From Sminthopsis crassicaudata (Eukaryota), in the NCBI RefSeq assembly GCF_048593235.1, contig NC_133623.1, positions 1,240,001 through 1,304,000 on the forward strand: a stretch of 64,000 nt of DNA. Direction: 5' to 3'. Shown here piece after piece: positions 16,717 to 64,000 of this stretch. The position numbers and the translations under genes were made by a program. The notes below the pieces were generated by a model. It did not search any database. It saw only the letters and a program-made list of their open reading frames with translations, and had not been told where the DNA came from. Position 1 is the stretch's first letter; each line of letters starts with the position of its first letter.

Positions 16717-16761
16717 ACGAACACGAGGGCTGGGGAGGGCTGGGGGAAGCTGCTGGCGGGC

Positions 16762-19284
<2,523 letters not shown>

Positions 19285-19399
19285 GGCTAGGCCTCGCGAC
19301 TGCGGTTCGTTCGTTCAGGGCGATCGGGAAGCTCTGCGGGTCCGCCCACTCAAGCCCGGTAGAACGGAGGTGGAGCAGAGCGACCGGCCTTTCTTGCCT

Positions 19400-19720: not shown

Positions 19721-20038
19721 CTTTCTTCTTTGGTTCTGAAGACGACCTATGACTAAACGCGCAGAGGAACATTGGGGAGGGGCCAAGGGAAGAAACAGCC
19801 AATAAACACGCGGGACAGTTGCCCCGGCAACCTTTTAATACACAGGGGAGGGTGATAGATTGCGCAAGCGTCCAGCAACATCAGCGTCCCTTCTCCTGGT
19901 CCTAGGGGTGGAGTGCAGAAAGAGGCGGGAAGGGGGGAGGAGTCGGAGAGAGGGGCGAGTTGCGAGGCTTCTGGGTGGGACAATCGCCTTTGGAGTGGGC
20001 AGCCCGGATCCTGACAGAGGCTCTTGAGCTAGAGGGCT

Positions 20039-21821: not shown

Positions 21822-22539
21822 AGCCATCAGGCCACGGGGGGTGGGGAGGGGAGAATATGGGGAGAACAGGGGGACTCTTGGATCCTTGTGTTGGGGGGAA
21901 TGAACTGGATTCTTTCACTACCTCTCTGAGCTGGTGCTTCAAGGCAGGGGAGCCCTCAATGCCCCCACCCCCCCACCCTTGCTCCCAAGATTGGGGCTGG
22001 CTAGTTGGGGGTTCACATCATCTCAGGGAGTGTGACATACCTCAGGGAAGGGATTGCCATTCCTAGAGATGAGAGTTGGATTGGAGGGTGGGATCAACCC
22101 CTTCTAATTTCCCAAGAAATTAGTTAATCGAGACAAAGTCATTGTAGGCTTCCAGTTCATGTACACCACCACTTCCCCCCCCAACTCCAAACACCCCCCC
22201 CCAATAAAAAACAACCTGGCCCTTTCTCCCTTCCGGTTTTTCATCACCAGATTTCTCCCTCTTCATTTAAAGCTGGTTCTGAAAGCTACGCGTGTCTTTT
22301 TTTCTATCGCCGCGGCCGAAAAAGAGAGTCACGTATTGCCGATGAATCCCTGGGGGGGGGGGGGGGGGGGGGGAAGGAAGGGAAAATGTTACTGGGAAGA
22401 GGAGGATGCTTGGGACAGGTCGTCCCTCCCACTGGCAGCCTCAGTATTGTGTCACCTACTTCTGGTGCCAGAGCCAGGAGGTAATGGCTATAGGTTAAGT
22501 GACTTCAGGTTAGGGTTATGGGAACAACCCTATTTTTAA

Positions 22540-38345: not shown

Positions 38346-38649
38346 AAAACAGTGCAATTGGGAGCTATTTCAGCAAAATCAATAAGAATGCACTAGAACA
38401 AGAATGTAACCTTGACAACGTGCAGCCCCCTCTTCTTCGAGTCTGACAGGCGGCACCACTGCTCACATGATTCACTTCCCAGGTAGTCCCTGGGAAGCAA
38501 TGGCCAATAATATGTGCCAGCAACAGAATGGAAATCTCACTGACCCAAATGAGATTTCTGGGATCTCCGACCTGGAATTTAGTCCAGGTACAGGAAACTA
38601 GAGAGAAGTCTCGGCCTTTGTTTCCAACGGAGTCTGACAAAACCGCCGG

Positions 38650-39600
38650 ATACCCAGCTCGAGGCCCTCTGGACCCCTAAGGTCACCGGCTCGTTCTCGG
38701 GGCGGAAGACTCCCATCCTCGGGATCGCGGCTCTTACAGGAGCTCTGAGCCACTTCTGCCACTCGAGCCTGAGCATGCCAGGTGGCCGGCTGTTTAGGGG
38801 AGATGTCCCGAAAACACAGAACTGGTCGGGGAAGAGAGGAAGCGGCCCGTGCCGGGAGCTGCGGCGGGCTAGGCACGACATGGGGTAGGTGCTCCCATCT
38901 CTCCCCCTCCCCCCACCGGCGTCAGGAGGAGAGGAAAGGGGACACTTGGCAGAGCCCGGGCACAAAAAGGGCCGAAGACAAAAGCTCAGTTCCCGCCCTG
39001 CCTCGCGGGGCGGAGCCTCGAGGAACACGTGACGGGGCACCTCGCGTCTAGATCCCAGGCTTCAGGCTCCGCTCCCGCCCGGGCCTGGGCGGGCCAGAGC
39101 CTCGCGGACCACGTGATGGCAACCCTGGGCCCGCCCCTCGCCGGGCCCAGGCCGGACTTCGGGTAGGCCCCGCCCCTCCAGGCCGAGTCACCTGACCGAG
39201 CCGCCCGGGCTCACCACCTTGAGAGGCCTGAGTGCGCCTGCGCCGAATCGTTGCTAAGGAAGCTGCCTGCGGGACACCGGGCTGCCAGGAGGAGGTTGGA
39301 GGTGGCTCGGGCCGGGCCGGGCCGGGCCGAGGCCGGGGCCGGGCCGGGCCGGCCGGGGACGAGGCGGAGAGCTACGGGGGAGGAGGTGGGCGGGCCTCTT
39401 CCCTTTGGGGTGCACATCTGGGCCTGTCAGGGAGGCTCGCCGAGTCTTTAGGTAACAGACGGCAGCCTCGTGCTGGCCCCGGGCTGTGCACAGTAGCCGG
39501 GACCCTCTGGAGGCAGTGATCCCGAGCGGAGGCCGCCCCGGGATCCTCAGCAGCCCAAGAGCGGAGGGAGCCCCCAGCCCACGGGGATCCACCCTCCAGG
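38650..39600. promoter_or_regulatory. CpG island, probable CDK20 promoter with non-coding first exon
   Basis: CpG-dense. E-boxes CACGTG about 39025 and 39110, NRF1-like TGCGCCTGCGC 39232-39242, X-box-like GTTGCTAAGGAAGC 39250-39263. Acceptor-like ...TTATTCCACAAG ending 40262, 7 nt before the ATG. Confidence 0.65.
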
Positions 39601-40269: not shown

Positions 40270-43200
40270 ATGGACCAGTACAGCATCCTGGGCCGGATAG
40301 GTGAAGGGGCCCATGGCATCGTGTTCAAGGCCAAGCATGTGGAGGTAAGTGGGGACCAGGCTGATGCAGGAAGCAGGCAGCTGCCCTCGTAAAGAAATCC
40401 CTCCAGTGTGCCCCCACACCGTTCCCCCTTCTCCACTGCCCCGGCTGTCTTTGTAAGCGATCTGCCTCTTCGCCCTCACCTGCGTCCTCCGGTGCTCCTT
40501 TCCTTGCCTCCTTCACACTCCCCTTCTCCTTTCCCGTCCTTTGCTCTCTGGGCAGCGTCTCACTCTCATTCCCTCCCTTCAGTGTTTCGCGCCCCGTCTC
40601 CCACTAGGACCTCTTCCCTCCCTTCCCCTGCCCTTCCGTCGCCCCCTCTCCCTTTTGTTCCGTGGCTCCCTTTTCTCTGCGGGTCCCCTCGGCCCTCCTT
40701 CTCTCGGGGTTGGGGATTTCTGGGATCCAGCCCTCCTCCCCGTGCAGCTGACTCAGTGCCATCTCCGGCTGTCATCACTATCTTGGACAGTAGATCTGCA
40801 CCCTTTAACAGCTACTGGACAACACGCTTCTGGCTCCTGGATTCCCTCCGGGCCTCCAAAGAGCCTCTACAGGCAGAAAACGGACACTGGGGGCTTCCCA
40901 GCTCTCCCTGCCCTCGATTCTTCTGAACATCTTGCCCAACCTTGTCATGTCCACCTGATGGCATCTCTCCTTTCCCACTGCCCCCCAATGGGGCACGCGC
41001 TCGGGATCACTTCCTACCTGGACCTGCCCGCCCCCGGGCTTTCCCTCCTCCTCCAGGCCACCCTCCCTTCAGCCGGCAGAGCAGGTCTAACCAAATCGCC
41101 CTCCTGGCACACGTGGTTTCCCCTTACCTCCGGGATCAAATGTAAAACCCTCGGGCATTCCGCACCTTTCCCACAGCCCATCCCTCCTTCCTCTCAGGCC
41201 CAGGAAGGACTCAGCTTTGTCTGTCTCTGAGCCGCAGCCCAGCCTCCTCTAGGGTTGGTGCTCTGGCTCTCCCTCCTGCCTCCCTGGGGCCTTTCCTTAG
41301 CCCTCCAGGTGGCTCGCTACCCTTGAGGTGACTCCAGGCTCACTTGGTAGACATTTGCCAGCCACAAACCTAAAGAACCTAAGCTCGGAGAGGCCAGGGG
41401 TGAATCTGGTTTTATCTGAGTTGCACTGGGGGTCAGCATGATGCCACAACATGGGGTCATATGTGAAGCCCTTAGCAAATGCTTATTAAATGATCAGAGA
41501 TCTGGTTCCTTGGGATAATGGGGCTGGATCTGGAGTCATAAAGACCCATCTTGCTGAGTCCTAAATTGATCTCAGACATGTGACCCTGGCCAAGTCCCTT
41601 AACCCTGTCTGCCTCAGTTTCCTCATCTGTCAAATGAGCTGGAGAAGGAAATGGCAATCCACTGGAGAGTCTCTTCCAGGAAAACCCCCAGTGGGGTTGT
41701 GAAGATTAGAACATGACTGAAGCACAGGCACCCGGTTTCTCGGCCGTTCCGTTGCCCTACTTGCCTGCCTCAGACCCTACGTGTGGGGGTGTCTTTCTCT
41801 CCTAGACGGGGGAGACGGTGGCTCTGAAGAAGGTTGCCTTGCGACGGCTGGAGGACGGCATTCCCAACCAGGCCCTGCGGGAGATCAAGGCCCTCCAGGA
41901 GATTGAGGACAACCAGTATGTAAGTCACTTCCTCCACCTTCCTTCTGGCCCCGTTGACTCATCTGGAAACTGGGGGCTGGCCTTAGATTCATTCCAGGGC
42001 TAAGTCGGGCTCCTGGGATCACAGAACTCAAGAGAAAGCTCTTAAGTGGCTGTGAAGTGCCCTCCGACCTCAGCTTCTCGGGCCCCAAGGATGAGCCCCA
42101 AGCAGCATTGGCTCTTGGGGTTCCCTGTTCATTAGCATTAAGAGGGCAGGGGGCAGGAGAGCTTGGGTTTCATGTCTTCCTAAGTGTCCAGGAACCTGGA
42201 TCCTCATCTTGGAACCGAGTAGGAGAAACTAGCTGGGAAGGGAGGATCTCAAAGCACATTCTGGCCTGGTTTTTTATTCTGTAAAATGGCCTGGGGTGGG
42301 GGAGAGGGGTTGGCTTGAGTGTGCATTGGCCAGAGGCTCTCCTCACCTCCTCTCCTTTGCGTTGGAACCCTGGTGTCCCTTGTGTCCGTCTGGCCTCCGT
42401 CCTCAGATCTCTGAAGCTGCCCGGTACAATGGTCTTTTCGCCTGGGCCTCATTTCCCCCAATCTCCCAGAAGCCTTGGACACTGTGGATCACTCTCTCCT
42501 TGAAGATGAGATTCTTGTCCTCTTGCTCCTCTTCCTCCTCTTTCCTTCTTCCTCCTCCTCCTCCTGCCTTCTTCTTCTCTTTCTTTCCTTCTGTCTGCAT
42601 CTCTATCTTGCTCCCTCCTTCTCTCTATATCTTTCTTTCACTCTTTGCTTCTCTCTTTCCTTCTCTCAACATCTTTCTTTCTCTTTCCTTTTCTCTACAT
42701 CTGTCTCTCCTTCTTTCTCCCCTCTCTATAGTTCTCTTGCTCTCTCCTCTCTACATTTGTCTCTGTATTTCCTTCTCTTTCTTTTTCTCTACATCTTTTC
42801 TTCTCTGTACATTTCCCTTGCTCCCTCTTTCTCTCTACATCTCTCTTGCTCCTTCCTTCTCTATGTTGTTCCCTTCTCTCTACATCTCCTTCTCTCTATA
42901 TCTCTCTTGCTCTCCTCTCCACATCTCTTTCCTTCTTTCTCTTTCCTTTTCTCTACGTTTCTCTTACTCCCTTTTCTCTACATCTCTCTTGCTCCCTCCT
43001 TTACTCTACATCTCTTTTTCTTTTTCCTTTTTTCTACATCTTTCTTTTCTTCTCTTTCTCTTTCCTTCTCCCTACAGCTGTCTCTTGTTCTCTCCTCTCT
43101 CTTGTTTCCTCCTTCTCTCTACATCTCTCTTTCTTCTTCCTCTCTTTCTCTCCTCTTTGCATCTCTGTCCTTCTTTCTACAGTTCTCTCCTTCTCCCTCC

Positions 43201-46200
43201 TCTCTCCACTTCTCTCTTTCTCTTGCCTTCTCTCTACATCTCTTTTCTCCTCTCTTCCCTTCTCTCTACATCTCTATCTTGCTCTTTCCTTTTCTCCCTT
43301 GCTCCCTCCTCTCCACATCACTCTCTCTTTCTCTACAGCTTTCTTGCTCCCTCCTTTTCTCTCCATCTCTTTGCTTCTCTCTTTCCTTTTTTGTACATCT
43401 CTATCTTGCTCCCTCCTCTCTACATTTCTCTCTTTCTCTCTTTCCTTCTCTCTGCATCTCTCCCTTGTTCCCTCCTCCTCCTCCTCTCTACATCTCTCTT
43501 TCTTTTTCTCTTTCCTTCTCTCTACATCTCTATCTTGGTCCCTCCTCCTCTCTACATCTCCTTTCCCCCCCCCTTTTCTCTACATCTTTCTTTCTTCTCT
43601 TCTCTTTCTTTCTTTCTCTCTATATCTCTTTCTTCCTCTTCTCTCTTTCCTTCTCTCTACATCTCTATCTTGCTCCCTCCTCCTCTCTACATCTTTCTCT
43701 TTCCTTTTTTTTACTTTTCTCTACAGTTCTATCTCTCCTTCTCTCTGCATATCTATCTTGGTCCCTCTTTCACTCTACATCTCTCTTGCTCCCTCCTCTC
43801 TACAGCTCTTTCTTGCTCCCTCCTTCTCTTTACATCTCTCTCTTGCTCCTTCCTCCTCCCTACATCTCTCCATCTTTTTCTTTTTCCCTTTCTCTATTTC
43901 TATTTCTTTTCTTCTCTTTCTCTCTCTCTCTTTCCTTCTCTCTACAGCTCTCTGCATCTATCTTGCTCCCTCCTTCTCTCTACATTTCTGTTTCTTTCTC
44001 TCTACATCTCTCTCTTGCACCCTCCTCTCTATATCTCTTTCTCTTTCATTTCCTCTACATATCTGTTTTCTTCTCTTTCTCTTTCCTTTTCTTTACATCT
44101 CTTTTTTCTCCCCTTCCTTCTCTCTTTTTTCTCTTCTTCTCTATTTCCTTCTCTACATCTTTTTCCTTCTCTACATTTTTCTGGCCTCCTCCTCTCTATA
44201 TCTCTTTCTCTTTCCTTCTCTCTTTCATTTTCTCTACATATCTCTCTGTTTTCTTCTCTCTCTTTCCTTTTCTCTATATTTATCTTTTTTCTCTCCTTCC
44301 TTCTCTTTGTCTCTATTTCCTTCTCTCTACATCTTTTCTCTCTTTTTCCTTCTCTCTGCATGCCTCTCTTGCTCCCTCCTCTCTACTTCTCTCTCTCTTT
44401 CCTTCTCTCTCCATCTATCCCTCTTTTCTTCTTTCCTTCTCTCTACATGTTTCTCTTTCCTTCTATCATTTTCTCTGATATCTTTTCTTTCTTTTTCTCT
44501 GTATCTTTTTTCTCACCTTCCTTCTCTCTACATCTCTCTCTTTTCTTCTTTCCTTCTCTCTACATCTCTCTCTTTTCTTCTTTCCTTCTCTCTACATCTT
44601 TCTCTTTCCTTCTCTCATTTTCTCTACATTTCTATCTCTGTTTTCTTCTTTCTCTTTCCTTTTCTCTGTTTCTCTTTTTTCTCTCCTTCCTTCTCTCTCT
44701 CTATTTCCTTCTCTCTACATCTCTCTTGCTCCCTCCTACTTCTCTCTTTCTCTTTTCTTCTCTCTACATCTCTATCTCTCTTTTCTTCTTTCCTTCTATC
44801 AACATCTTTCTCTTTCCTTCTCTCATTTTCTCTACATATCTATCTCTCTTTTCTCCTTTCTCTTTCCTTCTCTCTCTTTTCTTCTATCTACATCTTTCTT
44901 TCCTTCTCTCATTTTCTCTACATANNNNNNNNNNNNNNNNNNNNNNNNNNNNNNNNNNNNNNNNNNNNNNNNNNNNNNNNNNNNNNNNNNNNNNNNNNNN
45001 NNNNNNNNNNNNNNNNNNNNNNNNNNNNNNNNNNNNNNNNNNNNNNNNNNNNNNNNNNNNNNNNNNNNNNNNNNNNATCTCTCCTTTCCTCTCTTTCTTT
45101 CTCCCTACATCTCTCTTTCTCTTTCCTTCTCTCTGCATCTCTATCTTGCTCCCTCCTTCTCTCAGTTGCTCCCTCCTCTCCACATTTCTCTCTCACTCTC
45201 ACACACACTCTCCCTGTCTCCCTCCCCCCGCCCCCGCCCTCTCTCTCTCTTGCCTTCTCTTTGTATTTCTGTTTTATGCCCTTCTTCTCTCTATGTTTCT
45301 CTCTTGCTCCCTCCTCCTCCCTACGTCTCTGTCTCTCCCCTCTCCCTCGATTCTCCTCCTATATCTCTGACTAGTTGGGCTCTCTTCACCATCTGCTACA
45401 TCTTCACCATCACCGTCACCATCACCAGTATTACTATGGTGCCGACTATGTGCCAGGCAGTGGACTAAGCACTTCCCAAATGCGATCTCACTTCCGGGAG
45501 GTGCTCTTTGTATCCTCATTGTTCAGTTGAGGAAGCTGAGGCAGACAGAGATGACGTGACTTGCCTGGCATCACGTGTGTCTGAGGCTGGAATTGAATTC
45601 AGGTCTTTTTGCCTGGGGTCACGCACTCTCTTCTCCGAGCCACCTAGCAGTCCACTAACCATGGGGGACAAGCCAAGTTGGCCTCTTGTCCAACCCTTGA
45701 TGAACTTATCGGCACTCATGGGTTCAGCACGCACCTCTTGGAGAACCATTGTCAGATGTACCTGGACAGCTCTTCCCTCTCTCCTCAGCCGTTGGCAGCC
45801 ATCACTCAGGGGTTTCTGGACGTCTCCAGCCCAGACTGACCTCATCGTCGCTCTAGGCCTCCAGGGTTCCCCGAAGCGGAATCTTCTGGTTGCCATTTAT
45901 GCCGTTTTGTGGCCTCCAGGCTTTGGGCCTTTGCCACTAAGAGCAGGAGAGGCCTTTTCTTGCCCGCCTCCTTCTCTTTCATTGCCTGCCACCTCCCCTG
46001 TATTTCTTCCTTCACATCAAGGGCAAGGACTTTGGTCTGCCTCTCTTTGCATCCCCAGCACCTGGCACACAGTAGGTCCTTAAGAAATGTTTGTTGACTG
46101 ACTGGCCACCTTTTACTTTGCTCTGGTTTCTCCCGGTCTACAAATTGAATTGATGTTTCCATGCTGGCAGTGGGTGGAGATAGACAGGGGGCAGAGAACA

Positions 46201-49200
46201 AGCATTTATTAAGAGCCTGCGAGTACCAGGTACCAGGTGCTAGGCACTGTGCTAAGCGTGTCCCAATCACGTGATCCTCCTGAGCATCCTCAGAGGTCGG
46301 ACCAGTCTCGTCCGATGGCCCTGAAGGGCCTTGCCAGCTTTACCTGGCCATTAGGTGCCTGAGGCTGGTGCTCTGCATATAGCGGGGCCCAGCTGCAGAG
46401 GGCTTCGATGCAGCCATCTGTCAATGGCTTTGCCTTAGTTGCCCTGAGAAGCTTGGTCTGTCTCCGGGCACCCGAGGAGCTCCCTTGCTTTCATCCCGTG
46501 AAGCCCGGGGCATTTGATGCCTTTGCTTCCTGGTCCGTGAGACGATTCTGCGGACGCTGAGCCATGAGCGCCCTTTGATGGAGGTCCAGACCAGCAGTCT
46601 TGAAGCACCTTCAGGCCTCGCGCTTTTCTCGAGCCTAGGAAATGAGTCCGTGCTCAGGTCTGCCTGGATGATCCGGCAACGCCTTGGGCCTCAGTTTCCC
46701 AAATATAATCAGAGAAGTCTGGTGGCAGGCGGGCTCGGGTGTAGCGATCCCTTCGGCCTTGATTTCCTGCCTTCTGTAAAACTCTCTAAGTGCCCTTATC
46801 AGGTGTCCCTGGCACCCACAGGTGGTGAAGTTGAAGGCTGTGTTCCCGCATGGAGCAGGCTTCGTCCTGGCTTTTGAGTTCATGCTCTCTGACCTGTCTG
46901 AGGTCATCCGGCATGGGAAGCGGCCTCTGGCCCCAGCTCAGGTTAAAGCGTACATGCAAATGCTGCTCAAGGGTGTAGCCTTCTGCCACGCCAACAACAT
47001 TGTACACCGGGTATGGATACCCAGAGGGCCAGTGCCCAAGCTTTTTTGGGAGGGTGCTGGGCTGGGGATGGGCAGGGCTGGGGGGGGGGGCTCAGTTGAG
47101 CCTTGGCAAGGGGACTGGATGTTGGGCCTTAGACTTCTTTCTTCCTTTTTTCCTTCCTCCTCCCTTCTTCCTTGCTTCCTCTCTTTCCTTCCTCCTCCCT
47201 CCCTCCCCCCTCCTTTCCTTTCTTTCCTTCTTCCTTCCCCAGGACCTAAAGCCGGCCAACCTGCTCCTCAGCTCCTCAGGCCAGCTGAAGATCGCCGACT
47301 TCGGTCTTGCCCGTGTTTTCTCCCATAAGGGTGACCGACTTTATAGCCACCAAGTGGCCACGAGGTACACACCTCAGCCTGGTGGGAGGGGCAAATGTGA
47401 GCGAGTGGGGGGGGGGGGCAGGGGGAGCGGCATCAGTTGCGGGCTTTGGGGTAGGAGGCATTGGTAGGCATGCTTCTTTGGCCCCATTGGGGCTGCCACC
47501 TTTCCCTCCTCTTGCCCGCTAACGGCGTTTCCTCCATCGGCTGCAGGTGGTATCGGGCTCCAGAACTTCTGTATGGAGCCAGGCAGTATGATGAGGGTGT
47601 GGACCTATGGTAAGGCTGGGGCGAGAGGGAGAGGGCCTCAAGCAGGCCCAAGCAGGGGCCCAGCCATGTCTACTCTTGCCCACAGGGCCGTGGGCTGCAT
47701 CTTCGGGGAGCTCCTGAACAACTCCCCTCTCTTCCCTGGGGAGAATGACATCGAACAGCTGTGCTGTGTCCTGCGGGTCCTTGGGACCCCCAGCCCTCAG
47801 GTGTGGCCGGTGAGTAGCAGGGAAGTGGGAGAGGGCTTCCGCCAGGTCATCGTCAAGGCCCCATAATTCCTGTGTCCCTCTGGTCCTCCCCCAGGGGATC
47901 ACCGAGCTCCCAGATTACAACAAGATCTCATTCAAGGAGCAGCTGCCCCTGCCCTTACGCGAGGTGCTGCCCGACGCGTCCTACGAAGCCCTCCAGCTCC
48001 TGAGTCTCTTTCTTGTCTACCCTCCTCGAAGTCGAATCCAGGCCAATCAGGTATCCCCCTCCCCTCTCCCAGGTGCACCTCTGTGGGCTAAGAGGAAGTG
48101 GACCCGACTCCCCCCTCCTCAAGGAGCCCCCTCCCATCTCCGGCCAGATAGTGACCGCGCCCCCAGGCCTGTCCTAGGGACACAGATGAGACAAGGCGTC
48201 AGAGAGCTGACTCCCCCTTCTCTCCCCACCCCGGCACACAACCCGCCTAGGTCAGTTGTCATGCAGTCGTTTTTCGAGCGTGTTTTGTGGCGGAGATCTC
48301 GAAGTGGTCGGCCATTTCCTTCTCCAGCTCCTTTTACAGACAAGGGTACTGAGGCAAACCGTGTGAAATGACTTGCCTAGGGTCACACAGATAGTAAGGG
48401 TCCAAGGTTGGATTTGAACTCACCACGATGAGTCTTGCAGATCCCCAGGCTGCTGTTCTAGCCGTTCTAGTGCCACCTACCAGCCCACATAGATCAATAA
48501 GTACAAAGAACTCAGGCTCCTGGCAGCTCTGAGAGAGCCTCGGTAGGGAGCAGGAGGCTGAGTTCAGGGGGCAGCCCCTGGACCTGAACGACCGGGCTAG
48601 GGGGTCTGCAGCACCCCAAAGGCCACGTCTCAGTGATACAGGCAAGCGGAAAGTACTAGAGGAAGAGAGTTCCCTGCGGAGCCGAGGCTTAACTAATCGG
48701 CCAGTGGCCGCGGCCCAAAAGAACCCAGGGGCGGGAGTTTGCACCCCACTGGCCGGGACCAGGGAGGACCGAGCCTTCTCCGCCAGGACTTTGAGATGCA
48801 CAGGGGACACCTGGGAGGAGATAGCCAGCCAATAGCTGATGGTGTGCCATCTGACTGGAGGGCCAGAGAGGCCAGGGATTTGGGAGTCACCTGTGTCCAA
48901 ATGGTCAAGAAGCTCCTACTGTGTGCGAGGCCCCACCCCACGGGAGCACCCACGCTTGGGGGGCAGCAAAGGAGAGAGAGAAGGCCACTGCCGGTCTGAT
49001 TGTGAGGGACTAAAAACGGGGTGGGGGGAGCAGCAGAGCTTGTGGCCTTTGGAGTTCGGAAATGTACGAAAAGAAAGATGGGGGGGGGCCAAGGGGGAGC
49101 CGGAAGGAGTGATTCCAGGGGACGTCCCTGGAGCACAGTGGGAGAGGAGAAAGTAGGGCAGGCTTGGCAAGGAGACGTGGAGAAACGTGGGAACTCCCCA

Positions 49201-50947
49201 AAGACGGCCTTGAGTTTTCTCAGCCAAGAAGGGAGTGAGAGAAGGGTGGGGCTGATAGCTATGGTGAAGGCCCAGTGGGGGTGGGAGAACGGATCCTTGG
49301 GGCGGTCCCCAAGGGCATGGCTGGGCCAGGGACAAGCAGAGGCCAAACAGCAGTGGGCACCAAACTCAAGAATTTGGGGCTGAAAAGAGGCACAGGAGGG
49401 GGCCCAGTGGGACAGGGCAAGGGGTGAAGGGCCTGGAGATCAGTGGGCAGGCAGGGCCTAGAGAGCCGCTGACAGGGCCACCGGAGGCCAGGGCCAGGGG
49501 AGGGCCCACAGAGCTGCCTGCGGGGCCACCCGCTGACTTATGGGAACATTGTGATTGGCTGGCATAGGATACTTTCTGTTACTACTGTTGGTATGTGAAA
49601 GGAAGCCAAGCACAACTGAGGGAGGGGGAGATAAGGAACAGAACTGTTACAGAAGGACCCCCGCCCAGCTCCAGCCCAGGGTGGGCTCCGCCCAGGCCTC
49701 CCACTCCTTCCTGTGTGACAGAGAAGGGCCTGTTCTCTCCCCCGCCACCCATGCAAGCCCAAAAAAACTCCTTTAGAAAGCTACTTTGCTGGGGAGTGAG
49801 TTGCTGGTGACGGGAAGGCGAGGCAGGGGGCCCGCTTGGCCCTCTGGAGTTAAGGAGTCCCCTTCCCCTGGCCAAGGAATACGATCCGAGGCCCCAGCAG
49901 GTTGGCACATCCCATCTGGAAAGAGGAGGTCACAGGTGCTTTGAGATCAGAAGAGGAAGAGTATGCTTCTGGCTTTAGGGTGAGGAAATAGCATCTTAGC
50001 AGAGGCTCAGAAGTGACAGACGATCCCATGAGAGACCCGAGTGGATCTGCTTTTCTACATGGGAAGGGCTCTCGGCTTTGTGGTCCGATGCCCTGGGTTC
50101 AAATCCTGCCTCTTATTAGGACCAGCTGGGTGCCCTGAGGCAAGTCCCTCAGTCTTGGAGGCCACTGGCCGCTCTAGAGGGCTGGCTCGCCTCCTTGTAC
50201 TTAAATAAGGTAACTCAGAGCCGACCACCGGAGGCTCGCCTAGCTCGGGGGCCTTAGTGGACCTGTTTTACCCAACAGCTAGGAGTGGGGTTTCGGCCGT
50301 CCTTGATTAAGGTCCCAGTTCGTGTCTGATTGGATCCCGTTTCGTGCCCTTAGGGGGTCTGCTTTAAGGAACAGATAAAAATTGCTTACTGTCCAAACGT
50401 TTGCACGTCTCCTTCACTTAAGTCAGTAGGGGGCCCGCTTTAATGGACACCTTTGAGGAACAGAGTCCCCTTGTTTCTCTTTAACTGAGCCCGGGGCTTG
50501 ATAAAAATCTGCCGGCTTGCCACAGTGCTCAAAGGGGAACTGTTTCTCCCCCCTGTCGCCACCCCCACCCCCACCCCCAGGGTTTTTTTTGTGTGTGTGT
50601 GTCGAGCGAATTCAGCCAGCCCTTTCTTTGAAGGTGGAGGAAGCGGCGCCCACTGGGGAACTCACAAGGGATGAAGCCAGGGATATAGGGGTGAGACAGG
50701 ACTGGGCCGGGCCGGGCCACCCCTTCTCACTCCCCCCACATCCCCACAGGCCCTGCTACATGAGTACTTCTTCAGAGCCCCGCTGCCAGCCCACCCCTCA
50801 GAGCTGCCCATTCCACAGCGTGGGGGGGGGCCCAGCTCCAAGGCCCGACCAGGCCCTCCTCATGTCCACGACTTCAGGGTCGAGCAGCCCCTGGCTGAGT
50901 CGTTGCCAGATCCGGAGCTGATTCGGCCCTACCTCCCAGAGGGATGA
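40270..50947 (+). CDS. CDK20: Cyclin-dependent kinase 20 (CCRK), 346 aa, 8 coding exons, intact
   Basis: Exons 40270-40344, 41806-41919, 46822-47010, 47243-47364, 47547-47609, 47686-47809, 47895-48050, 50750-50947 (1041 nt). MDQYSILGRIGEGAHGIVFKAKHVETGETVALKK, PNQALRE helix, HRDLKPAN, DFG, HQVATRWYRAPELLYGAR, C-terminal PAHPSELPIPQR...PELIRPYLPEG*. Confidence 0.96.
42520..45365. repeat. About 2.8-kb pyrimidine-rich (CT) degenerate tandem/low-complexity tract in CDK20 intron 2
   Basis: Very few G on the + strand; recurring TCTCTACATCT and CTTGCTCCCTCC motifs. Confidence 0.92.
44925..45076. other. Assembly gap (N run)
   Basis: 152 N inside the CT tract. Confidence 1.
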
Positions 50948-51000
50948 GCCTCCCACTGCCCTGGCCTCCACCCAGCTCTGCCTGGCCCCAAGAGATTGCC

Positions 51001-51021
51001 TTATCTGGGCACTCCCAGCTG
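51001..51021 (-). promoter_or_regulatory. GATA/E-box composite matching the core of the GATA1 haematopoietic enhancer (G1HE/HS1), inside the CDK20 3' UTR
   Basis: TTATCT-GGGCACTCC-CAGCTG, i.e. CAGCTG-N9-AGATAA on the minus strand. Same layout as the mouse G1HE core as I recall it (CCCTTATCTATGCCTTCCCAGCTG). Confidence 0.7.
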
Positions 51022-51140
51022 CTCCCCCTGGCCTTCCTGCGGCCAGGGTGGGAGGGGACTCAGGCGTCCGGCTTCCCTCCCTCTGGAGCTTCAGGAGAAC
51101 AGACTTCTAACCTTGGCTGTGCCTCAGTTTCCCTAATAAC

Positions 51141-51146
51141 AATAAA
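51141..51146 (+). terminator. CDK20 polyadenylation signal AATAAA
   Basis: First AATAAA, 194 nt after the CDK20 stop. Confidence 0.7.
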
Positions 51147-51478
51147 CACTACATTGGACTCCAAAGGCAGGGTCAGTGGGAATATTCAAAGTGACTGGGA
51201 AATGGGAAGAAGGCCTCAGTTTTCCCAGATGTGATTTGGGCTTGATGATTCCCACCTGTCCTGCTCTCTGCCCTTGGAGCAGGGGGACCAAAGTGCCACT
51301 ATTTGGGGGGGGGGGGAAGGGAGAGAAAGATGAATGAATTTCCCTGTCACACAGGGGCTGAAAGCAGGGGGTGAGGGGTATAGATGGGGCTAGGGAGGCC
51401 CCAGTATCCGCTCTCTTTCCCCCAACCTCCTGTGGGGCTGCTAGTTGCCTCAACCCCAACAGCCAAGGTCCGGCCCTC

Positions 51479-53267: not shown

Positions 53268-56200
53268 ATGGATTTCCCGCCCGGTCTGGGGGAGCCAGAG
53301 GCCCTGGCCTCTTTCGCTGAGCCTACCTTGCTGTCCCCATCGGCCTCCGTCAGCGCCACCGAAGAGCCGGGACTCTTCTTCTCGGGGCCCGAGGGGACCG
53401 ATGCCGGCGATGCCGCCACGACGCTGCCCTACTACCACCGGGGGCCAGCTGCTGATGCTTACAGACACTCACCAGGTATCCTGGGGGGGGGGGGCGGGGA
53501 GGGTTTTGAGCTTCCATCTTCTCTGTCCCTATGGTTGAAGGGTAGGACTGGTGATTGCACGAGCACTCGATGCTGTGCCTAGCACACAGTAGGTGCCATA
53601 GAAACGCTCCTTCCCTTCTCTGTCAGCAGCCAGCCCCAATCTTCCATATATGGTGTGGGGCACCCTTCCTCTTCCCCCCCGACCAGGCAAGCTTTTGTTC
53701 AATGGGCCGAGCCTGGGGGCAGTGCCAACCGAGCTAGCGGTGTGCACGGACAGCAGATCTTGGGAAGGGGGAGTCGCATTAAAGACAAATGCAGAGAAGC
53801 CCAATGCAGGTGGGCAGGATTTTTAAGGCCCGCCTCCTTAGGAATTTACATCTTTGCCTCTGGAGCAGGGAGCCGCCGGGTCAGGCCGGCAGGGAGGGCC
53901 AGAGAAAGGCCAGGGGGAGGCAGGGAGACCCACGAGAAAGCGGTAGGGGTAAGGGTCCTGAGCGAAAAGTGTTAGTGGGAGTGAACTCAAAGCGCTGGCT
54001 ATGTGGATGTGGGGAGGAAGGTCCGGATCCGCCCGGCACCTGCCTGGCTCCCAGAGGAAGGCCAGAGGAGGCAGGGTGGAGGAGGAGGCAGCACCGGGAA
54101 GCTTCCTTGGTTTTGGAGAGATGAGAGAGAGGAAAGCTTGCAGGGCAGAAGCCCCTGAGGTCTATTTTGGCCACACTGACGCCGAGGAGATGTGCAAGTG
54201 GGGAGAGACTGCCGGCATGGTACTGGAAGTATGGGGCCGGGAGAGCAGTTCTGGCTGGGGGACTGGGGGCATCTGCTCACGGGTGAACATACTCAGGAAG
54301 CGAACCTTCGGGGGTGGGGCAAGCCAGGATGGAAAAGGGTCTGGGACCAGGGCTTTTGGGGGAAGGGGGCGGGCAGGAGTTGGGGAGCGAGCAAATAAAG
54401 GAGGCTGAGAAGGACATCAGCTAGGGAGAACATCGATGAGTGAGGGCCAGGAGATAATTTCCAAAAACTGCCAAGAGATCACGAGGCCCAAGAAAGAGCA
54501 ATTAGGGTATACGGCTTGTTGAGCACAGAGAGCCAGCGTCAAGCCTTCGGGATGCCACGCACTCTTAAAAATAACTGGGGCTGTGCCAAGGACAGGTTTT
54601 GATACGGGCCCTGAGGGTACTTTCCTTCTTAGAACTGAAAATGTCTCAGAATTCTGGCAGACTCGGTTTGCCTTGTTGGATCCCCCTGAGAAGGGGCTCT
54701 GGGACCCCCAGGAACTAGAGAACTAGCGATGGCAAGCAGATGGCAGGGGCTAAGGGGTCGGAAGGGAATGGAAGCAGCAACTGTTTGGTGGGGACTTTGT
54801 GATTACTTTGTGTTTTTGTTTGTTTGTTTGTTTGTTTTTTTCAGTTAACGAGTCTTTATTTTCTCTCCCCTCCTCCCCCCCACGGGAAAAGAAAACTCCA
54901 AAAGCTTGGACACTGACCACGGGTTCTGTAGCTTCAGGTCTTGGTACCTGCCTCCCTACCGCAGCTTCTCCTCCGACATCAAAGGGGTGGTTAGAAAGCT
55001 TGGTAAAGTAGGACAGGAAAGCCTCCACCGGGGTGAGGGCTGAGGCTGGATCTCAAAGGAGGTGCTTGAGCAGAAAAGATGTCTGGAGGAGCTGCTGAAG
55101 GGAGTTGGGATCAGGGAACGGGCAGTTCGGGGCACCGGGCCAAGGCGTGTCATCGCTTAGCCACCGAGCGCTCCTCGAGGGTTGGCCGAGATCACGTGCC
55201 CCCTACGTGTCTGCCCTTTTACTGCCTTTTCCCCAGAGACTTTCCATATGCCAGGCGGTGTACGGTGTGTTGGATCTGTCTGTCCCTACTCTGACCAGCA
55301 GCCATGTTGGGAGTCAGAAATAATATTGGGGGTCGAGCTAGACCAGCAGAGGACTCCCCAGAGACAGCGAATGGGGAAAGAGCCTTGAAGTCAGGAGTCC
55401 CCTGTTTCCAGTGCTCCGGCTCCCGTCTGCTGGCGATGAGACATTAGGGACCCGGGGCCTGACCGTCACGCCCTTCCATTCCCTCTCCTTACAGTATGCC
55501 AAGTGTACCCAATTCTCAACTGGATGGATGGAGGGCTCGGGGGAGCCCCCTACGCGGCCGCAGGTTGGGCCTATGGGAAGGCAGGGCTGTACCCGGCCTC
55601 TGCCCTGGCCCCGGCTGTTCGGGAGGCCTCTCCACAGCCAGCTCCCGAGAGCCCCGATGTGAAAGGGAGCCCAAGGGGCTTCCTGGAGACCTTGAAGACA
55701 GAGCGAATGAGTCCAGACCTGCTCACCCTGGGGGTCCCAGCGGCCGTGGGGCCCTCCCACTATGTGGCAGCCAGTCCTCCTGACTTCACCACTGCTGCCT
55801 TCTTCTCACCTGCCGGAAGCCCCCTCTCAGTAGCAGGTGGAGGTAACGCCTACTCTCCGAAGCTACGTGGGGCGCTTCCCCTGTCTCCCTGTGGTGAGGA
55901 TGCAGGATCGGGTTGGGAGGGACACTCAAGGAGAGGAAAAGGGTCCAGGGGCTTAGCTGGGGTCAGCTTTCACTTTCTGTCCAATTTCTTGCCTTTCCTC
56001 CCAAGCAGAGGCCAGAGAGTGTGTGAACTGTGGAGCGACGGCTACCCCGTTGTGGCGTCGAGACGGTACCGGGCACTACCTGTGCAATGCTTGTGGCCTG
56101 TACCACAAGATGAACGGGCAGAACCGTCCCCTCATAAGGCCCAAGAAGCGCCTGGTGAGGAGGGCGGGCCTCGGGGCCAGGGAGGTGAAAAGAGGGCAGC

Positions 56201-57061
56201 CGGGCAGCAGGGACCTCACCCAGCCCCTGGGCTCTTTCCAGATTGTCAGTAAGCGAGCAGGTACCCAGTGTACCAACTGCCAGACGACTACGACGACACT
56301 GTGGCGGCGCAATGCCAGCGGGGAGCCCGTGTGTAACGCTTGTGGTCTCTACTACAAGCTGCACAATGTAAGCCCCCCGCCCCTCCCCCCAGGCCCAGGG
56401 CTTTCCTGGTTTGGGCCCATGAGAGAGGGCTCTGACCTTAGGGTTTGCCCCTTTTCCACATCGAGGATGATTCCCAAGCCCCTTTTGAAGCCTGCTGTAT
56501 TTGATGGGTGACACGAGGACACTGGGGCTGGGGCCTGGGTGACTTGGCAGGGAGGGCTGGGCCAGGGAATCTCCGAGACCTAGACCCTTCCTCCTGGATG
56601 GCTGAGCTGGGAGGAGGGGAACTGGGTGAGAAAACCCAGTTTCTGGGGTGTTAGGGTTTATTCTCCCTAGGACCCTTATACTGGGGATGTCTCTTTTCGG
56701 GGTACCAGAGCCCCTGGGTTTGTCTCGCCCCCAGGTGAACCGGCCGCTGACTATGCGCAAAGATGGCATCCAGACTCGGAACCGCAAAGTGTCGGGCAAA
56801 GCTAAGAAGAAGGCCCGGGTGGGCCAGGCCCTGATGGCTGCCGGGCAGGGGACAGCAGCAGCGGCTGCTGTGGCTGCGGCCGGCCCAGGAGACCTGGCCA
56901 CTGAACCGCTCTACCCGAGCCTCGGGCCTGTGGTGCTCTCGGGCCACATGGCCTCAGTGGGGCACCTGGTCCCCTTTCCCGGGTCTGCCGCCCCCCTGCT
57001 CGGGGGCACGGGCGCCCCCTTTTCCGGGGCCACGGGGGTGGTCTCGGCCCTGGGCTCGTGA
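53268..57061 (+). CDS. GATA1: Erythroid transcription factor GATA-1, about 401 aa
   Basis: Exons 53268-53475, 55495-55893, 56009-56154, 56242-56367, 56735-57061 (1206 nt). MDFPGLG-like start, N-finger [50 protein letters not shown]-finger [42 protein letters not shown] 57208-57213. Confidence 0.97.
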
Positions 57062-57760: not shown

Positions 57761-60700
57761 ATGGCATCCCAGCCTGAGAAGCCAGGCCCGAATCCTTCAC
57801 CCTCAGGCACCCGGATGACGGTCAGTTCTGGGGGTTTAAGTCCCTGCCGCTGAATGAAGGAGGGGGCTTCTGGGAGGCTCCCCAATGAGGAGAAGAGGAG
57901 GGCAGGGCTCAGGGCGGAGGGGGGGGAAGGAGGGAGGCAGGGGAGATGCTCCCACTGAAGAACCATTGTCCCCCACCGTCTGAATCGCCTGCCTGTGGCA
58001 TCCCTAGGGGCAGAAGAGGGGCGGCCGGAAGGGGTCCCCGGCCCCTCGGCCGAGCCCGGGTTTGGCTGAGGCTCGACGCAGAGGGAGGGCAAAGAAATTG
58101 AGTCAAGTGTCTGAGCAAGAGCTGGTGACCAACCTGCAGGACCTAGTGAGTGCGGGCCCCTCCCTTCCCCCTCTCCATCCGATTCTGGGGGGCGGGGGCC
58201 CAACCCCAACCCCAATCCCCATATGGGCTTTCAGGCCTTGACGCGACTGAATAAAAATCGCGTCATTTCTGCTGCAGCAGAAACCCCGAGGGGAAGCCCC
58301 TCCCAGATCCATCCCTTCTTTTACTTATTCCTTTAGATCTTTCTGGATCTAGCTAGTGAGGGGAGGGGATCGGCCTTCATTTCTGAATGGGCGTGGCCTC
58401 AGGCAAACCGACCTGTGGAAGGCTGAGGCCTCCCACTGCATCCGGAGCCATCCCGGCCATCCCAGCCATCCCATCTCTTTCTGGCCACGGGACCCAGATG
58501 GCTCTGGAGGGGCAAGTGAGCCAGGTGTCCCTGCCGGCCTCCCTCCCTCCAAGGCAATTCCCTTCCATGATGTCTCTTCAGAAATGAGGGACAAACAACA
58601 ATAATCTCTTTCTTTCCCTCCACGATTTCAATCCGGGGTCCTGGGTCACTTTAGTCCTCTTTCTCATTCCCCACTTAAGACTTCTGGACTTTAACCTGGG
58701 GAATCGCTTGAACCTCTTCAAATTGTGCTTTTCTCTTCCTCCTGGAGGCAAGAGCATCTTCTTGGGGGCCTCCCTCCTTTTCCATTTCTTCTAGTTTTTA
58801 TTCTCTTCTAGGACCTTGAGGCCGAGTCAGAAATACCCTCTGGGACAGGCCTGGTGCTGGATGAGAGAATGGGCAGCTTCCGTTGCCCCTGGGATGACAG
58901 GTGAGCCTGGAAAAGGCCCTGAGGAAAGGCTTCCACTTAGCCGGGAGCCAAAGGCACATTCAGTCTTTTCCCTTTTCTTTTTCCTTAGTTTTCCTGAACG
59001 CCCAGAACGCCTTCAGGCCGTGCAGCAGCAGCTGTCCCGGGACTGTCTGCTTGAGCGCTGTATCCCCATTGAGGTGAGCACGGCCTCTGGAGAGGAAGGC
59101 TGGCACTCTCACCGCTTCCCTCTCCAACTGCCTCGGTTTCTCTCCCATTCCAAATTATCAGCAAACCCGAGGTGCTTGGGCTCTGTTCCAGACCCAATTT
59201 CCCTCTGGCCTGAGTCTCCCAAAGTCCAAGAGGGCTTTCCATAAAGGACTTCTCCATATTGGCTCCTTGCTTCTGTATCCTCCCACAGGCCCAGCCAGCC
59301 ACTCCCCAGGAGCTGCAGCTTGTCCACAGGTGAGCTGAAAAGCTTGGGTACTGAGCCCCCTTCTTTCCCTTGGGGAGTTTCCTTCTTGGGAAGGAACCCT
59401 CCCCACCCACCCCCCCCCCCCGCAAGTCTCTGGAGAATCCTTTATCCATCTTTCTGTGGAATCACAGCCAGGAATACGTGGACCTGATGTCGTCCACCCC
59501 GGACATGACTCAGATGGAGCGTCGGGCCCTCTCAGACACCTATGATTCTGTGTACCTACACCCGGTGAGCCATCAGCCTTAGACTTCCGTGCTTTGGGGA
59601 GATTGGCAGGGATGGAAAAATGCAGACCCTAGAAACTGATTACCTTTTCTCTCTCTTCCCTCCCACCTTCTCTTCGTCTCTTTCTCCCCCTCTATCTTTT
59701 CATTTGTTCTCCCTCCCTTTCATCTTGTTTCGGTTCTCTCCTTTGTCTTTTTTTTTCTCCATCTTCCTGTCTCCCTCATCCCCATCCCTACCCCCCCCCC
59801 TCGTCTCTCCTGTGCTTGTCACACTTTCTTCCTCCACGTTCACACTGGTCCCTTGTTTCTCCTTCACTCCTCCCCCATCTTGGAACAGAACTCGTTCCCC
59901 TGTGCACTCCTGGCTACTGGGGCACTTCTTCGCCTGGTGGACGCCCTCATGGGAGGCGACATCCGAAATGGACTGGCTCTTGTCAGGTAGGTGCTGGGGA
60001 GGGGAGGTGGAAGGCGCGATGAGCCTGATCTCCCCTCACTCCACCCCTCTGTTCCTCATCCGAGGGAATCTAGCTCCGTGCCCGTTTTTGGACAGCGGAT
60101 GTTGGTCCAGACCATTTGTGACATGCGTCCCCGCTCCACTGGCCCTGATCCTCCCGCTGCTATCACATTTGTGCCACAGCACTGATGTACACGTAGGGGT
60201 TCATCGTTGCCTCTTTTTTTTTTAAGCAGTTTGTTCTGAGCTCTGCTTTCCATCAGCGCCTTCACTGATTCATTCAATCATTCGTTCAGTCAGTCCCCCT
60301 CTGATCCTGTGTTTGGTCCTCTGGTCCTAGGCCTCCTGGCCATCATGCCCAACGTGACAGCATGAACGGCTACTGCATGTTCAACAACGTGGCCATTGCT
60401 GCCCGTTATGCCCAGAAAAAGCACCACGTCCCACGGTGAGGCTGGGGGCGAGGCTGGGGGCGGTACGGGCTTTCCGAGGAGTCTGCCCACCAAGGCTAGG
60501 CCCGGTGATAGACCGGCCACTTCCCCGAGTAGCAGATGAATTCTCAGGGCACACTTCACCTTTTGCAGGGTACTCATTGTGGATTGGGATGTCCACCACG
60601 GGCAAGGCACGCAGTTCATCTTTGAGCAGGACCCCAGGTATATTCAGAGTGGGCCTTCCCCTTAGTATACTAGAGGGCTGGGGATCCCTTCCCCTGGCCC

Positions 60701-63700: not shown

Positions 63701-64000
63701 GGCTGTGGCTGCTCGCCACGCCCAGGACATGGTTGGCCGGGCCCTCCGGTGAGTATGACTGAGGCAGGAAGGTGAGGAGGACCCGGGGCGGGGGGGAGCC
63801 GGAGCAGGTGAGAAGTGCGCCATTGGCCTTCACCCTTGAAGTGGAGTCTTTGGTGGTCCTGTGATGTCATCAATCTGACCGCCCACGGGGCCAGGCCACA
63901 AAAAAAGCCACCAAGCGTAAGGGGAGCCAGGGAAGACCCAAAAAAGCAGCTCCTTGCACCACCCCCCCCCTTCCAGAATCCTGATCGTGGACTGGGACAT
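57761..64000 (+). CDS. HDAC6: Histone deacetylase 6, 3'-partial (deacetylase domain 1 and most of domain 2)
   Basis: Exons 57761-57820, 58008-58145, 58812-58900, 58989-59073, 59289-59329, 59468-59564, 59889-59986, 60331-60435, 60569-60637, 60748-60874, 60973-61038, 61388-61447, 61598-61687, 62018-62124, 62381-62448, 62847-63015, 63110-63238, 63341-63509, 63615-63748, 63977-end, with consistent phases. Motifs RPPGHHA (twice), [34 protein letters not shown]. The first exon is the least certain. Confidence 0.95.

What the first reader, a model, noticed from the sequence alone, without database searches (positions are those of the whole stretch)
40270..50947. Intact intron-containing CDK20 sits directly upstream of GATA1 in an X-homologous region
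Seen: 8 exons, all splice sites canonical, 346 aa, and no gap between exon 3 and GATA1. Established: human CDK20 is autosomal (9q22) and the human gene upstream of GATA1 is GLOD5. Inference: either this is the ancestral position and eutherian CDK20 moved off the X by a DNA-level relocation that kept its introns, or it was inserted here in marsupials. An X-linked cilia/flagella kinase would be subject to meiotic sex-chromosome inactivation, making it an out-of-X candidate.
Basis: partly seen in the sequence, partly recalled or inferred. Interest (0 to 1): 0.78.

Follow-up and report, generated by a model that had tools for sequence, protein, structure and literature searches.

The report
Marsupial CDK20 at its ancestral X site
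An intact cilia-kinase gene (CDK20) lies just upstream of the blood gene GATA1 in this marsupial, as it does in a frog and beside the same neighbour in a turtle, so the autosomal position in humans is the derived one: the gene left the X with its introns in placental ancestors.

Summary
An 8-exon, 346-codon CDK20 gene lies on the + strand at 40270-50947. Every intron is GT-AG and all kinase motifs are present. The stop codon is 2.3 kb upstream of the GATA1 start codon, and HDAC6 follows GATA1.

The N gap (44925-45076) lies inside intron 2, within a CT-rich tandem array. Both sides of the gap align, in order, to the ungapped intron 2 of the tammar wallaby, so the join is sound and the reading frame is not affected.

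The animal is a dasyuromorph marsupial close to, but not identical with, the Tasmanian devil.

- Wallaby has CDK20-GATA1-HDAC6.
- A koala gene model reads through from CDK20 into GATA1.
- Xenopus laevis has PQBP1-TIMM17B-TAFA-CDK20-GATA1.
- A turtle has TIMM17B-CDK20.
- A damselfish has cdk20 followed by a GATA1-like gene.
- In a shrew, CDK20 has unrelated neighbours, and human CDK20 is at 9q22.1.

The gene tree follows the species tree, and only one CDK20 locus is annotated per marsupial. The marsupial site is therefore ancestral, and the placental gene was relocated at DNA level, at an inversion breakpoint.

The idea that meiotic sex-chromosome inactivation drove the move remains untested. 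The scan has no CDK20 note on other DNA.

The parts
40270..40344 (+). CDK20 exon 1 (ATG, glycine loop GEGAHG)
   Evidence: followed by donor GTAAGT
41806..41919 (+). CDK20 exon 2 (VALKK lysine, PNQALRE helix)
41920..46821 (+). Intron 2, which holds the CT-rich tandem array (about 42513-45177) and the N gap 44925-45076
   Evidence: both flanks are collinear with the ungapped wallaby intron 2
46822..47010 (+). CDK20 exon 3
   Evidence: Pfam Pkinase E 1.6e-08; 100% identical to the devil CDK20 protein
47243..47364 (+). CDK20 exon 4 (HRDLKPAN, DFG)
47547..47609 (+). CDK20 exon 5 (activation segment, APE)
47686..47809 (+). CDK20 exon 6
47895..48050 (+). CDK20 exon 7
50750..50947 (+). CDK20 exon 8 with the TGA stop
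   Evidence: the C-terminus matches opossum and platypus CDK20
51141..51146 (+). First AATAAA after the stop; candidate CDK20 poly(A) signal
   Evidence: the 3' end of the RNA was not measured
38500..39500 (.). CpG-rich stretch upstream of the ATG; candidate CDK20 promoter
   Evidence: GC 0.59-0.74, CpG observed/expected 0.64-0.75; parts are conserved with wallaby
53268..57061 (+). GATA1 coding region (ATG to stop, five coding exons)
   Evidence: collinear with the wallaby 411-aa GATA gene
57970..64000 (+). HDAC6, 5' part (runs off the window)
   Evidence: Hist_deacetyl domain E 5.7e-23; collinear with the wallaby HDAC6 gene
20036..21823 (+). TIMM17B, the conserved upstream neighbour of CDK20 (approximate limits)
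   Evidence: Tim17 domain E 1.1e-16; collinear with turtle and Xenopus Tim17 genes
16758..19290 (-). PQBP1 (approximate limits)
   Evidence: collinear with the turtle and Xenopus genes upstream of Tim17; no Pfam hit on the two pieces tried

Best explanation
This is the single, functional marsupial orthologue of CDK20. CDK20 (also called CCRK) is the PNQALRE-type kinase that activates the ciliary kinases MAK and ICK/CILK1. The gene sits where it sat in the tetrapod ancestor, and probably in the bony-vertebrate ancestor: between TIMM17B and GATA1, head-to-tail with GATA1. In marsupials this block is on the X.

The placental position (human 9q22.1) is derived. After the marsupial-placental split, and before the sampled boreoeutherians diverged, CDK20 was moved to an autosome as genomic DNA with all seven introns. 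This happened either as an excised fragment or as a DNA duplicate followed by loss of the X copy.

The vacated interval coincides with one breakpoint of the inversion that turned the GATA1-HDAC6-PCSK1N block in placentals and brought GLOD5 upstream of GATA1. The two events are therefore probably linked.

Shown here: the gene model, selective constraint, orthology, and synteny in wallaby, koala, frog, turtle and damselfish. Inferred: the timing, the link to the inversion, and any selective reason.
For: Gene model and constraint
- The gene is intact, with 8 exons and 346 aa, and carries GEGAHG, VALKK, PNQALREI, HRDLKPAN and DFG.
- dN/dS against the wallaby orthologue is 0.11-0.12.
- The protein is 84-86% identical to placental CDK20 and 94% identical to opossum CDK20 over its full length.

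Orthology
- In the gene tree, marsupials form one clade (97/95) and placentals another (100/100). Platypus falls outside both, and mammals sit within amniotes. This is the pattern expected for 1:1 orthologues.

Synteny
- Wallaby: CDK20, then GATA (411 aa), then HDAC6.
- Koala: the isoform X1 model runs from CDK20 exon 7 into GATA1 exons 2-3.
- Xenopus laevis: a WW-domain gene (PQBP1 by position), Tim17, TAFA, CDK20, then a two-finger GATA gene of 367 aa.
- Turtle (Chrysemys): Tim17, then CDK20.
- Damselfish (Stegastes): a prefoldin gene, cdk20, then GATA fingers 6 kb downstream.
- Girardinichthys: an annotated isoform carries both Pkinase and GATA domains.

Placental state
- Shrew CDK20 has the same eight exons but is followed by an F-box/WD40 gene. 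Only the exons align to this window.
- Human CDK20 is at 9q22.1 (PMC11734941).
- GLOD5 lies upstream of GATA1 in human and mouse (PMC10103973).

X-linkage and copy number
- GATA1 is X-borne in the tammar wallaby (PMC3046482).
- All devil isoforms map to one contig per assembly.
- There is one CDK20 cluster per marsupial species.
Against: - Monotreme, afrotherian and xenarthran positions were not obtained, so the timing is bracketed only loosely.
- The amphisbaenian (Rhineura), catshark and gar loci showed no GATA1 or TIMM17B gene within the 10-kb flanks. A pipefish has other neighbours. The fish evidence therefore rests on one draft scaffold and one annotated fusion model.
- The absence of a second copy is judged from annotated proteins only, not from a whole-genome search.
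- Duplication followed by reciprocal loss cannot be told apart from a direct move.
- No RNA reads could be laid. Expression rests on an indirect word-share argument.
- The human gene order beyond GLOD5-GATA1 comes from my own knowledge and from earlier scan notes, not from a tool result here.
Confidence: 0.85

Rival explanations
1. Old duplicate with reciprocal loss. The therian ancestor carried two intron-bearing CDK20 copies, one beside GATA1 and one autosomal. Marsupials kept the X copy and placentals kept the autosomal one.
For: A single-copy gene tree cannot separate this from a move if the duplication was shortly before the split. A DNA-level relocation usually passes through a two-copy stage in any case.
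Against: Frog and turtle show only the TIMM17B-side copy. No CDK20-like second cluster appeared for any marsupial, turtle or frog among the listed hits. The branch between the mammalian node and the therian node is short.
Confidence: 0.08
2. Marsupial-specific insertion or recent duplicate. CDK20 was copied into the GATA1 upstream region in marsupials, and the true orthologue is elsewhere or lost.
For: Only that the human position differs.
Against: The same adjacency occurs in Xenopus laevis (TIMM17B-TAFA-CDK20-GATA1) and, in part, in a turtle and a damselfish. The marsupial genes are sister to the placental genes and are under purifying selection. Each marsupial has one annotated locus.
Confidence: 0.03
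3. Assembly artefact. The N gap in intron 2 joins two unrelated pieces, so exons 1-2 and exons 3-8 do not belong to one gene next to GATA1.
For: The gap is real, and it sits in a 2.7-kb low-complexity array that is hard to assemble.
Against: The same array flanks both sides of the gap. Both flanks map, in order, to adjacent parts of the wallaby intron 2, which has no N. The eight exons together give exactly the conserved 346-aa protein. Exons 3-8, which are the part next to GATA1, have no gap at all.
Confidence: 0.02

Closest known systems
Human/mouse CDK20 (CCRK, p42, PNQALRE kinase; Chlamydomonas LF2)
   Same: Same length (346 aa). Full-length identity to placental CDK20 is 84-86%. It has the same PNQALRE helix and catalytic motifs and the same eight coding exons. 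The function is presumed to be the same: activating MAK, ICK/CILK1 and CDKL5-type ciliary kinases (PMC11412320, PMC8500422 and PMC12711092, listed).
   Different: The chromosomal position differs. Here the gene lies between TIMM17B and GATA1 in an X-homologous block, whereas the human gene is at 9q22.1.
Out-of-X gene traffic by retroposition (X-derived autosomal retrogenes such as PGK2; from my own knowledge)
   Same: The direction of movement is the same: from the therian X to an autosome. The selective argument that could apply is also the same, namely escape from meiotic and post-meiotic X silencing.
   Different: The placental gene keeps all seven introns at the ancestral positions, so it is not a retrocopy. 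The parental X copy is gone in placentals rather than retained, and CDK20 is broadly expressed rather than testis-specific.
DNA-level positional relocation of single genes, as catalogued for Drosophila X chromosomes (PMC2817413) and across metazoans (PMC13689697)
   Same: A single gene changes chromosome while its neighbours stay in place. Gene structure is preserved and copy number stays at one.
   Different: This is a mammalian case on the therian X, at an inversion breakpoint. I found no paper that describes it.

Membership tests
CDK20/CCRK orthologue group | Protein kinase domain with catalytic lysine, HRDLKPxN and DFG | tested here: met
   Pfam Pkinase hits on exons 3 and 4. Motifs VALKK, HRDLKPAN and DFG are at residues 30, 125 and 145.
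CDK20/CCRK orthologue group | PNQALRE motif in place of the PSTAIRE cyclin-binding helix | tested here: met
   PNQALREI at residue 45. The review PMC11734941 gives PNQALRE as an alias of CDK20.
CDK20/CCRK orthologue group | Groups with annotated CDK20 proteins, at the place expected for its species | tested here: met
   All strong hits are named CDK20. The tree places the window with the devil inside a marsupial clade that is sister to placentals.
CDK20/CCRK orthologue group | Conserved eight-coding-exon structure | tested here: met
   Exon boundaries are the same in wallaby, shrew, turtle, amphisbaenian, frog, shark and fish loci.
CDK20/CCRK orthologue group | Kinase activity towards the activation loops of MAK/ICK | not testable with these tools
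   This needs biochemistry. It is inferred from sequence conservation only.
DNA-level gene relocation off the X (in placentals) | Outgroups fix the ancestral position at the marsupial site | tested here: met
   Xenopus laevis has Tim17-TAFA-CDK20-GATA. Chrysemys has Tim17-CDK20. Stegastes has cdk20 followed by GATA fingers. Monotremes were not obtained.
DNA-level gene relocation off the X (in placentals) | The derived locus lacks the ancestral neighbours and keeps the introns | tested here: met
   Shrew locus L008 has eight exons and an F-box/WD40 neighbour, and only its exons align to the window. Human CDK20 is at 9q22.1.
DNA-level gene relocation off the X (in placentals) | Single copy in both lineages | tested here: inconclusive
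   There is one annotated locus per marsupial, and the scan holds no other CDK20 note in this genome. No whole-genome search for unannotated copies or retrocopies was possible.
DNA-level gene relocation off the X (in placentals) | The ancestral site was X-linked when the gene moved | tested here: inconclusive
   GATA1 is X-borne in the tammar wallaby (PMC3046482). Devil, opossum and koala CDK20 lie on contigs of 78-89 Mb, which I take to be X chromosomes from my own knowledge of marsupial karyotypes. The window's own chromosome is not stated.
Retrogene | Intronless copy of a spliced mRNA | tested here: not met
   Both the marsupial and the placental genes have seven introns at shared positions.
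Escape from meiotic sex-chromosome inactivation as the driver of the move | Meiotic or post-meiotic need for the gene, and silencing of the X-linked copy in marsupial spermatocytes | not tested
   No paper in the library links CDK20 to spermatids or to meiotic sex-chromosome inactivation. No RNA data could be laid.

The most novel reading that the evidence does not exclude
CDK20 left the therian X in stem placentals in the same multi-break event that inverted the GATA1-HDAC6-PCSK1N block. The autosomal copy was then fixed because X-linkage silences the gene during and after male meiosis. CDK20 activates MAK, the 'male germ cell-associated kinase', and other flagellar-length kinases. Marsupials, which keep the gene on the X, would then need either escape from post-meiotic silencing or an undiscovered backup copy.
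Probability: 0.15. Interest if true: 0.7.

Novelty: new member of a known kind. Interest (0 to 1): 0.45.

Why it matters
The gene itself is ordinary and is already annotated in related marsupials. The new point is positional.

Frog, turtle, fish and marsupial synteny together show that CDK20 originally sat directly upstream of GATA1. Placentals then lost it from the X by an intron-preserving move. Documented traffic off the mammalian X consists almost entirely of retrocopies that leave the parent gene behind, so a clean DNA-level departure of a broadly expressed ciliary kinase at an inversion breakpoint is an uncommon, datable example.

The result also bears on GATA1 regulation. In marsupials, the 3' end of CDK20 occupies the interval where the placental GATA1 upstream enhancers lie. 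Read-through CDK20-GATA1 gene models exist in koala and in a fish.

Finally, it offers a natural comparison (X-linked versus autosomal CDK20) for testing whether meiotic X silencing limits flagellar genes.

Tried and rejected
- **Devil and opossum look-ups.** Look-ups of the devil isoform X4 and opossum isoform X2 proteins found no gene on record. I used the wallaby instead.
- **Girardinichthys fusion isoform.** Its locus could not be fetched either.
- **Loci with no informative neighbours.** The amphisbaenian, catshark and gar loci gave no neighbours of interest within 10 kb. The pipefish has unrelated neighbours.
- **Stegastes 'Pkinase+GATA' protein.** I first read this as a natural fusion. 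It is a scaffold artefact: exon 3 lies on a small contig misplaced between N runs. The adjacency of cdk20 and the GATA gene on that scaffold still stands.
- **Whole-flank tblastx against the window.** This was swamped by GC-rich low-complexity matches. Only the collinear PQBP1/TIMM17B hits were used, and they were rechecked with blastn and Pfam.
- **TAFA relic.** A search for a relic of the Xenopus TAFA gene in the 21.9-40.3 kb spacer found nothing.
- **Literature.** Searches for CDK20 with GATA1, synteny, marsupial X or spermatids found no relevant paper.
- **RNA reads.** Nothing was laid. I submitted no query made from those places afterwards. One later local script used the whole window file as a BLAST subject for protein queries, and nothing matched there.
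Full report
**What is in the sequence**

Six-frame translation and splice-site inspection give a CDK20 gene on the + strand with eight coding exons: 40270-40344, 41806-41919, 46822-47010, 47243-47364, 47547-47609, 47686-47809, 47895-48050 and 50750-50947. All seven introns are GT...AG. The exons sum to 1038 nt, which is 346 codons plus a TGA stop. The first AATAAA after the stop is at 51141.

Exons 3 and 4 hit the Pfam protein-kinase domain. The protein carries GEGAHG, VALKK, PNQALREI, HRDLKPAN and DFG. PNQALRE is a published alias of CDK20 (PMC11734941).

GATA1 follows on the same strand. Its ATG is at 53268, both GATA fingers lie at 56008-56365, and the stop comes after 57058. HDAC6 comes next (Hist_deacetyl domain). 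Upstream lie OTUD5 (OTU domain), a gene I read as PIM2 from its N-terminal sequence (no Pfam hit), PQBP1 (about 16.8-19.3 kb, - strand) and TIMM17B (about 20.0-21.8 kb, + strand, Tim17 domain).

The only N runs are 25784-26155 and 44925-45076.

**The assembly gap**

The flagged gap lies in intron 2, so frame across it is irrelevant: exon 2 ends and exon 3 begins in phase 0. It sits in a CT-rich tandem array with a unit of about 28 nt. The array runs 42513-44923 and resumes at 45084-45177, so the same repeat lies on both sides.

Independent support comes from the tammar wallaby locus L002, which has no N. Window 41762-42213 aligns to L002 11518-11964, and window 45298-45668 aligns to L002 12150-12511, in the same order and orientation. 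The roughly 3.1 kb of array plus gap therefore corresponds to about 186 bp in the wallaby. It is an expansion in the window's lineage, not a join of foreign pieces.

I tried to see the exon 2-exon 3 junction in RNA. No reads were laid, and I submitted no query made from those places afterwards. One later local script used the whole window file as a BLAST subject for protein queries, with no match there.

**Whose genome**

Exon 3 is 100% identical to Tasmanian devil CDK20. Over exons 1-7, however, the window is 95% identical to the devil protein, and it groups with the devil at 100/98 support. The animal is therefore a dasyuromorph marsupial other than the devil reference.

**Is the gene functional?**

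The orthologous wallaby coding sequence has the same eight exons of identical length and is intact. dN/dS between the two is 0.11 (NG86) to 0.12 (YN00), from 96 nucleotide and 23 amino-acid differences. A CpG-rich stretch lies about 1 kb upstream of the ATG.

The run search gives indirect evidence of spliced mRNA. For the query 46800-48100, eleven runs from four studies hold 0.40 of the sampled words. By my arithmetic, 0.40 is the fraction expected if only words lying wholly inside exons 3-7 are present (504 of 1271). Seven other runs hold 0.84-0.95, as DNA would. The tool labels the kind of all these runs as a guess, so this is suggestive and not proof.

**Orthology**

A maximum-likelihood tree of 33 CDK20 proteins, built on the 281 columns of exons 1-7, follows the species tree. 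Marsupials form one clade (97/95) and placentals another (100/100). Platypus lies outside both, mammals as a whole have 100/99 support, and they sit within amniotes.

Only one CDK20 cluster appears per marsupial species. All ten devil isoforms map to one contig per assembly. The scan's notes hold no other CDK20 in this genome. The marsupial and placental genes therefore behave as 1:1 orthologues.

**Synteny, the decisive evidence**

| Species | Arrangement |
|---|---|
| Tammar wallaby | CDK20, then a 411-aa GATA gene 2.3 kb downstream, then HDAC6; collinear with the window from 25 kb to 61 kb |
| Koala | Annotated isoform X1 leaves CDK20 exon 7 and continues in sequence matching window 53218-53475 and 55390-55659, which are GATA1 exons 2 and 3 read in another frame; a read-through model that also shows adjacency |
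| Xenopus laevis | A WW-domain gene (PQBP1 by position), Tim17, a TAFA-family gene, CDK20, then a two-finger GATA gene of 367 aa, all within 22 kb |
| Painted turtle | Tim17, then CDK20 about 3 kb downstream; PQBP1, TIMM17B and CDK20 exons collinear with the window |
| Damselfish (Stegastes) | A prefoldin gene, cdk20, then GATA fingers 6 kb downstream on the same strand |
| Girardinichthys | One annotated CDK20 isoform carries a GATA domain |

The chimeric 'Pkinase+GATA' protein of Stegastes is an artefact. Exon 3 lies on a small contig misplaced between N runs.

Against this, shrew CDK20 has the same eight exons but is followed by an F-box/WD40 gene, and only its exons align to the window. 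Human CDK20 is at 9q22.1. GLOD5 occupies the interval upstream of GATA1 in human and mouse (PMC10103973).

The amphisbaenian, catshark and gar loci had nothing informative within the 10-kb flanks, and a pipefish has other neighbours.

**Reading**

The TIMM17B-CDK20-GATA1 order is ancestral for tetrapods at least. Marsupials keep it and placentals lost it. Because the placental gene retains all introns, the move was at DNA level and not by retroposition.

According to an earlier scan note (s1-176111) and my own knowledge of the human map, the marsupial order continues as HDAC6-PCSK1N. The human order is GLOD5-GATA1-HDAC6-ERAS-PCSK1N-TIMM17B-PQBP1. The two differ by an inversion of the GATA1...PCSK1N block, and one breakpoint falls between TIMM17B and GATA1, exactly the interval that CDK20 occupies here. 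A link between the inversion and the loss of CDK20 from the X is therefore plausible, but it is an inference.

**X-linkage**

The window's chromosome is not stated. GATA1 is X-borne in the tammar wallaby by RNA-FISH with BACs (PMC3046482). Devil, opossum and koala CDK20 lie on contigs of 83.1, 89.4 and 78.3 Mb. From my own knowledge of marsupial karyotypes, that is the size of their X chromosomes and not of their autosomes.

**What remains hypothesis**

It fits the known role of CDK20 as the activator of MAK and ICK/CILK1 and of a flagellar-length kinase (PMC11412320, PMC8500422 and PMC12711092, listed). However, the review describes CDK20 as widely expressed, no paper links it to spermatids or to meiotic X silencing, and I have no expression data. 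I put this reading at about 0.15.

**Verdict**

Rivals are an older duplicate with reciprocal loss (0.08), a marsupial insertion (0.03) and an assembly artefact (0.02).

The gene is a known one. The relocation is a new, modestly interesting member of a known class of events. The scan has not reported this on other DNA.

Noticed in passing
window 42513-45177: A CT-rich tandem array with a unit of about 28 nt fills most of CDK20 intron 2 and holds the N gap. The same interval is only about 186 bp in the wallaby, so it is a lineage-specific expansion. It gives long spurious open frames on both strands.
   Followed up: partly
window 49520-52850: The second half of CDK20 intron 7, exon 8, the 3' UTR and the spacer up to the GATA1 promoter align to the wallaby at 76-78% identity over two long blocks. 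No other non-coding part of the gene aligns in such long unbroken blocks. This is probably GATA1 upstream regulatory DNA overlapping the 3' end of CDK20.
   Followed up: no
koala protein P0221 against window 53218-53475 and 55390-55659: The koala 'CDK20 isoform X1' model is a CDK20-GATA1 read-through that is out of frame in GATA1 exons 2-3. A Girardinichthys CDK20 isoform (P0234) carries a GATA domain. Conjoined transcripts of the two genes may be common.
   Followed up: partly
hit lists: No bird or crocodilian CDK20 appears among the listed hits, even with a turtle query, although turtles, squamates, amphibians, fishes and invertebrates do. The gene may be lost or unassembled in archosaurs.
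   Followed up: no
L004 5800-8525 (Xenopus laevis): A TAFA-family gene lies between TIMM17B and CDK20 in the frog. No relic of it was detected in the window's 21.9-40.3 kb spacer.
   Followed up: partly
L001 5780-7384, 9509-9558 and 11123-13229 (Stegastes): N runs bracket a misplaced contig that carries cdk20 exon 3. This produced the annotated chimeric 'Pkinase+GATA' protein P0102.
   Followed up: yes
window 47895-47897: Residue 230 is glycine (GGG) in this animal. The other eight mammalian CDK20 proteins aligned have glutamate at this position, just before ITELPDYNK.
   Followed up: no
devil proteins P0001 and P0271-P0279: None of the annotated devil CDK20 isoforms is the canonical 346-aa form. 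Several retain intron 7, and the N-terminus differs at four residues (positions 3-6).
   Followed up: no
L009 387-7795 (alligator gar): A Ras/Arf-type small GTPase gene of 205 aa lies head-to-head upstream of cdk20. It might be related to ERAS, but its identity was not checked.
   Followed up: no
L008 17947-25178 (shrew) and dingo protein P0226: In shrew, an F-box/WD40 gene lies just downstream of the relocated CDK20. A dingo CDK20 isoform carries a beta-propeller domain that may come from the same kind of neighbour.
   Followed up: no
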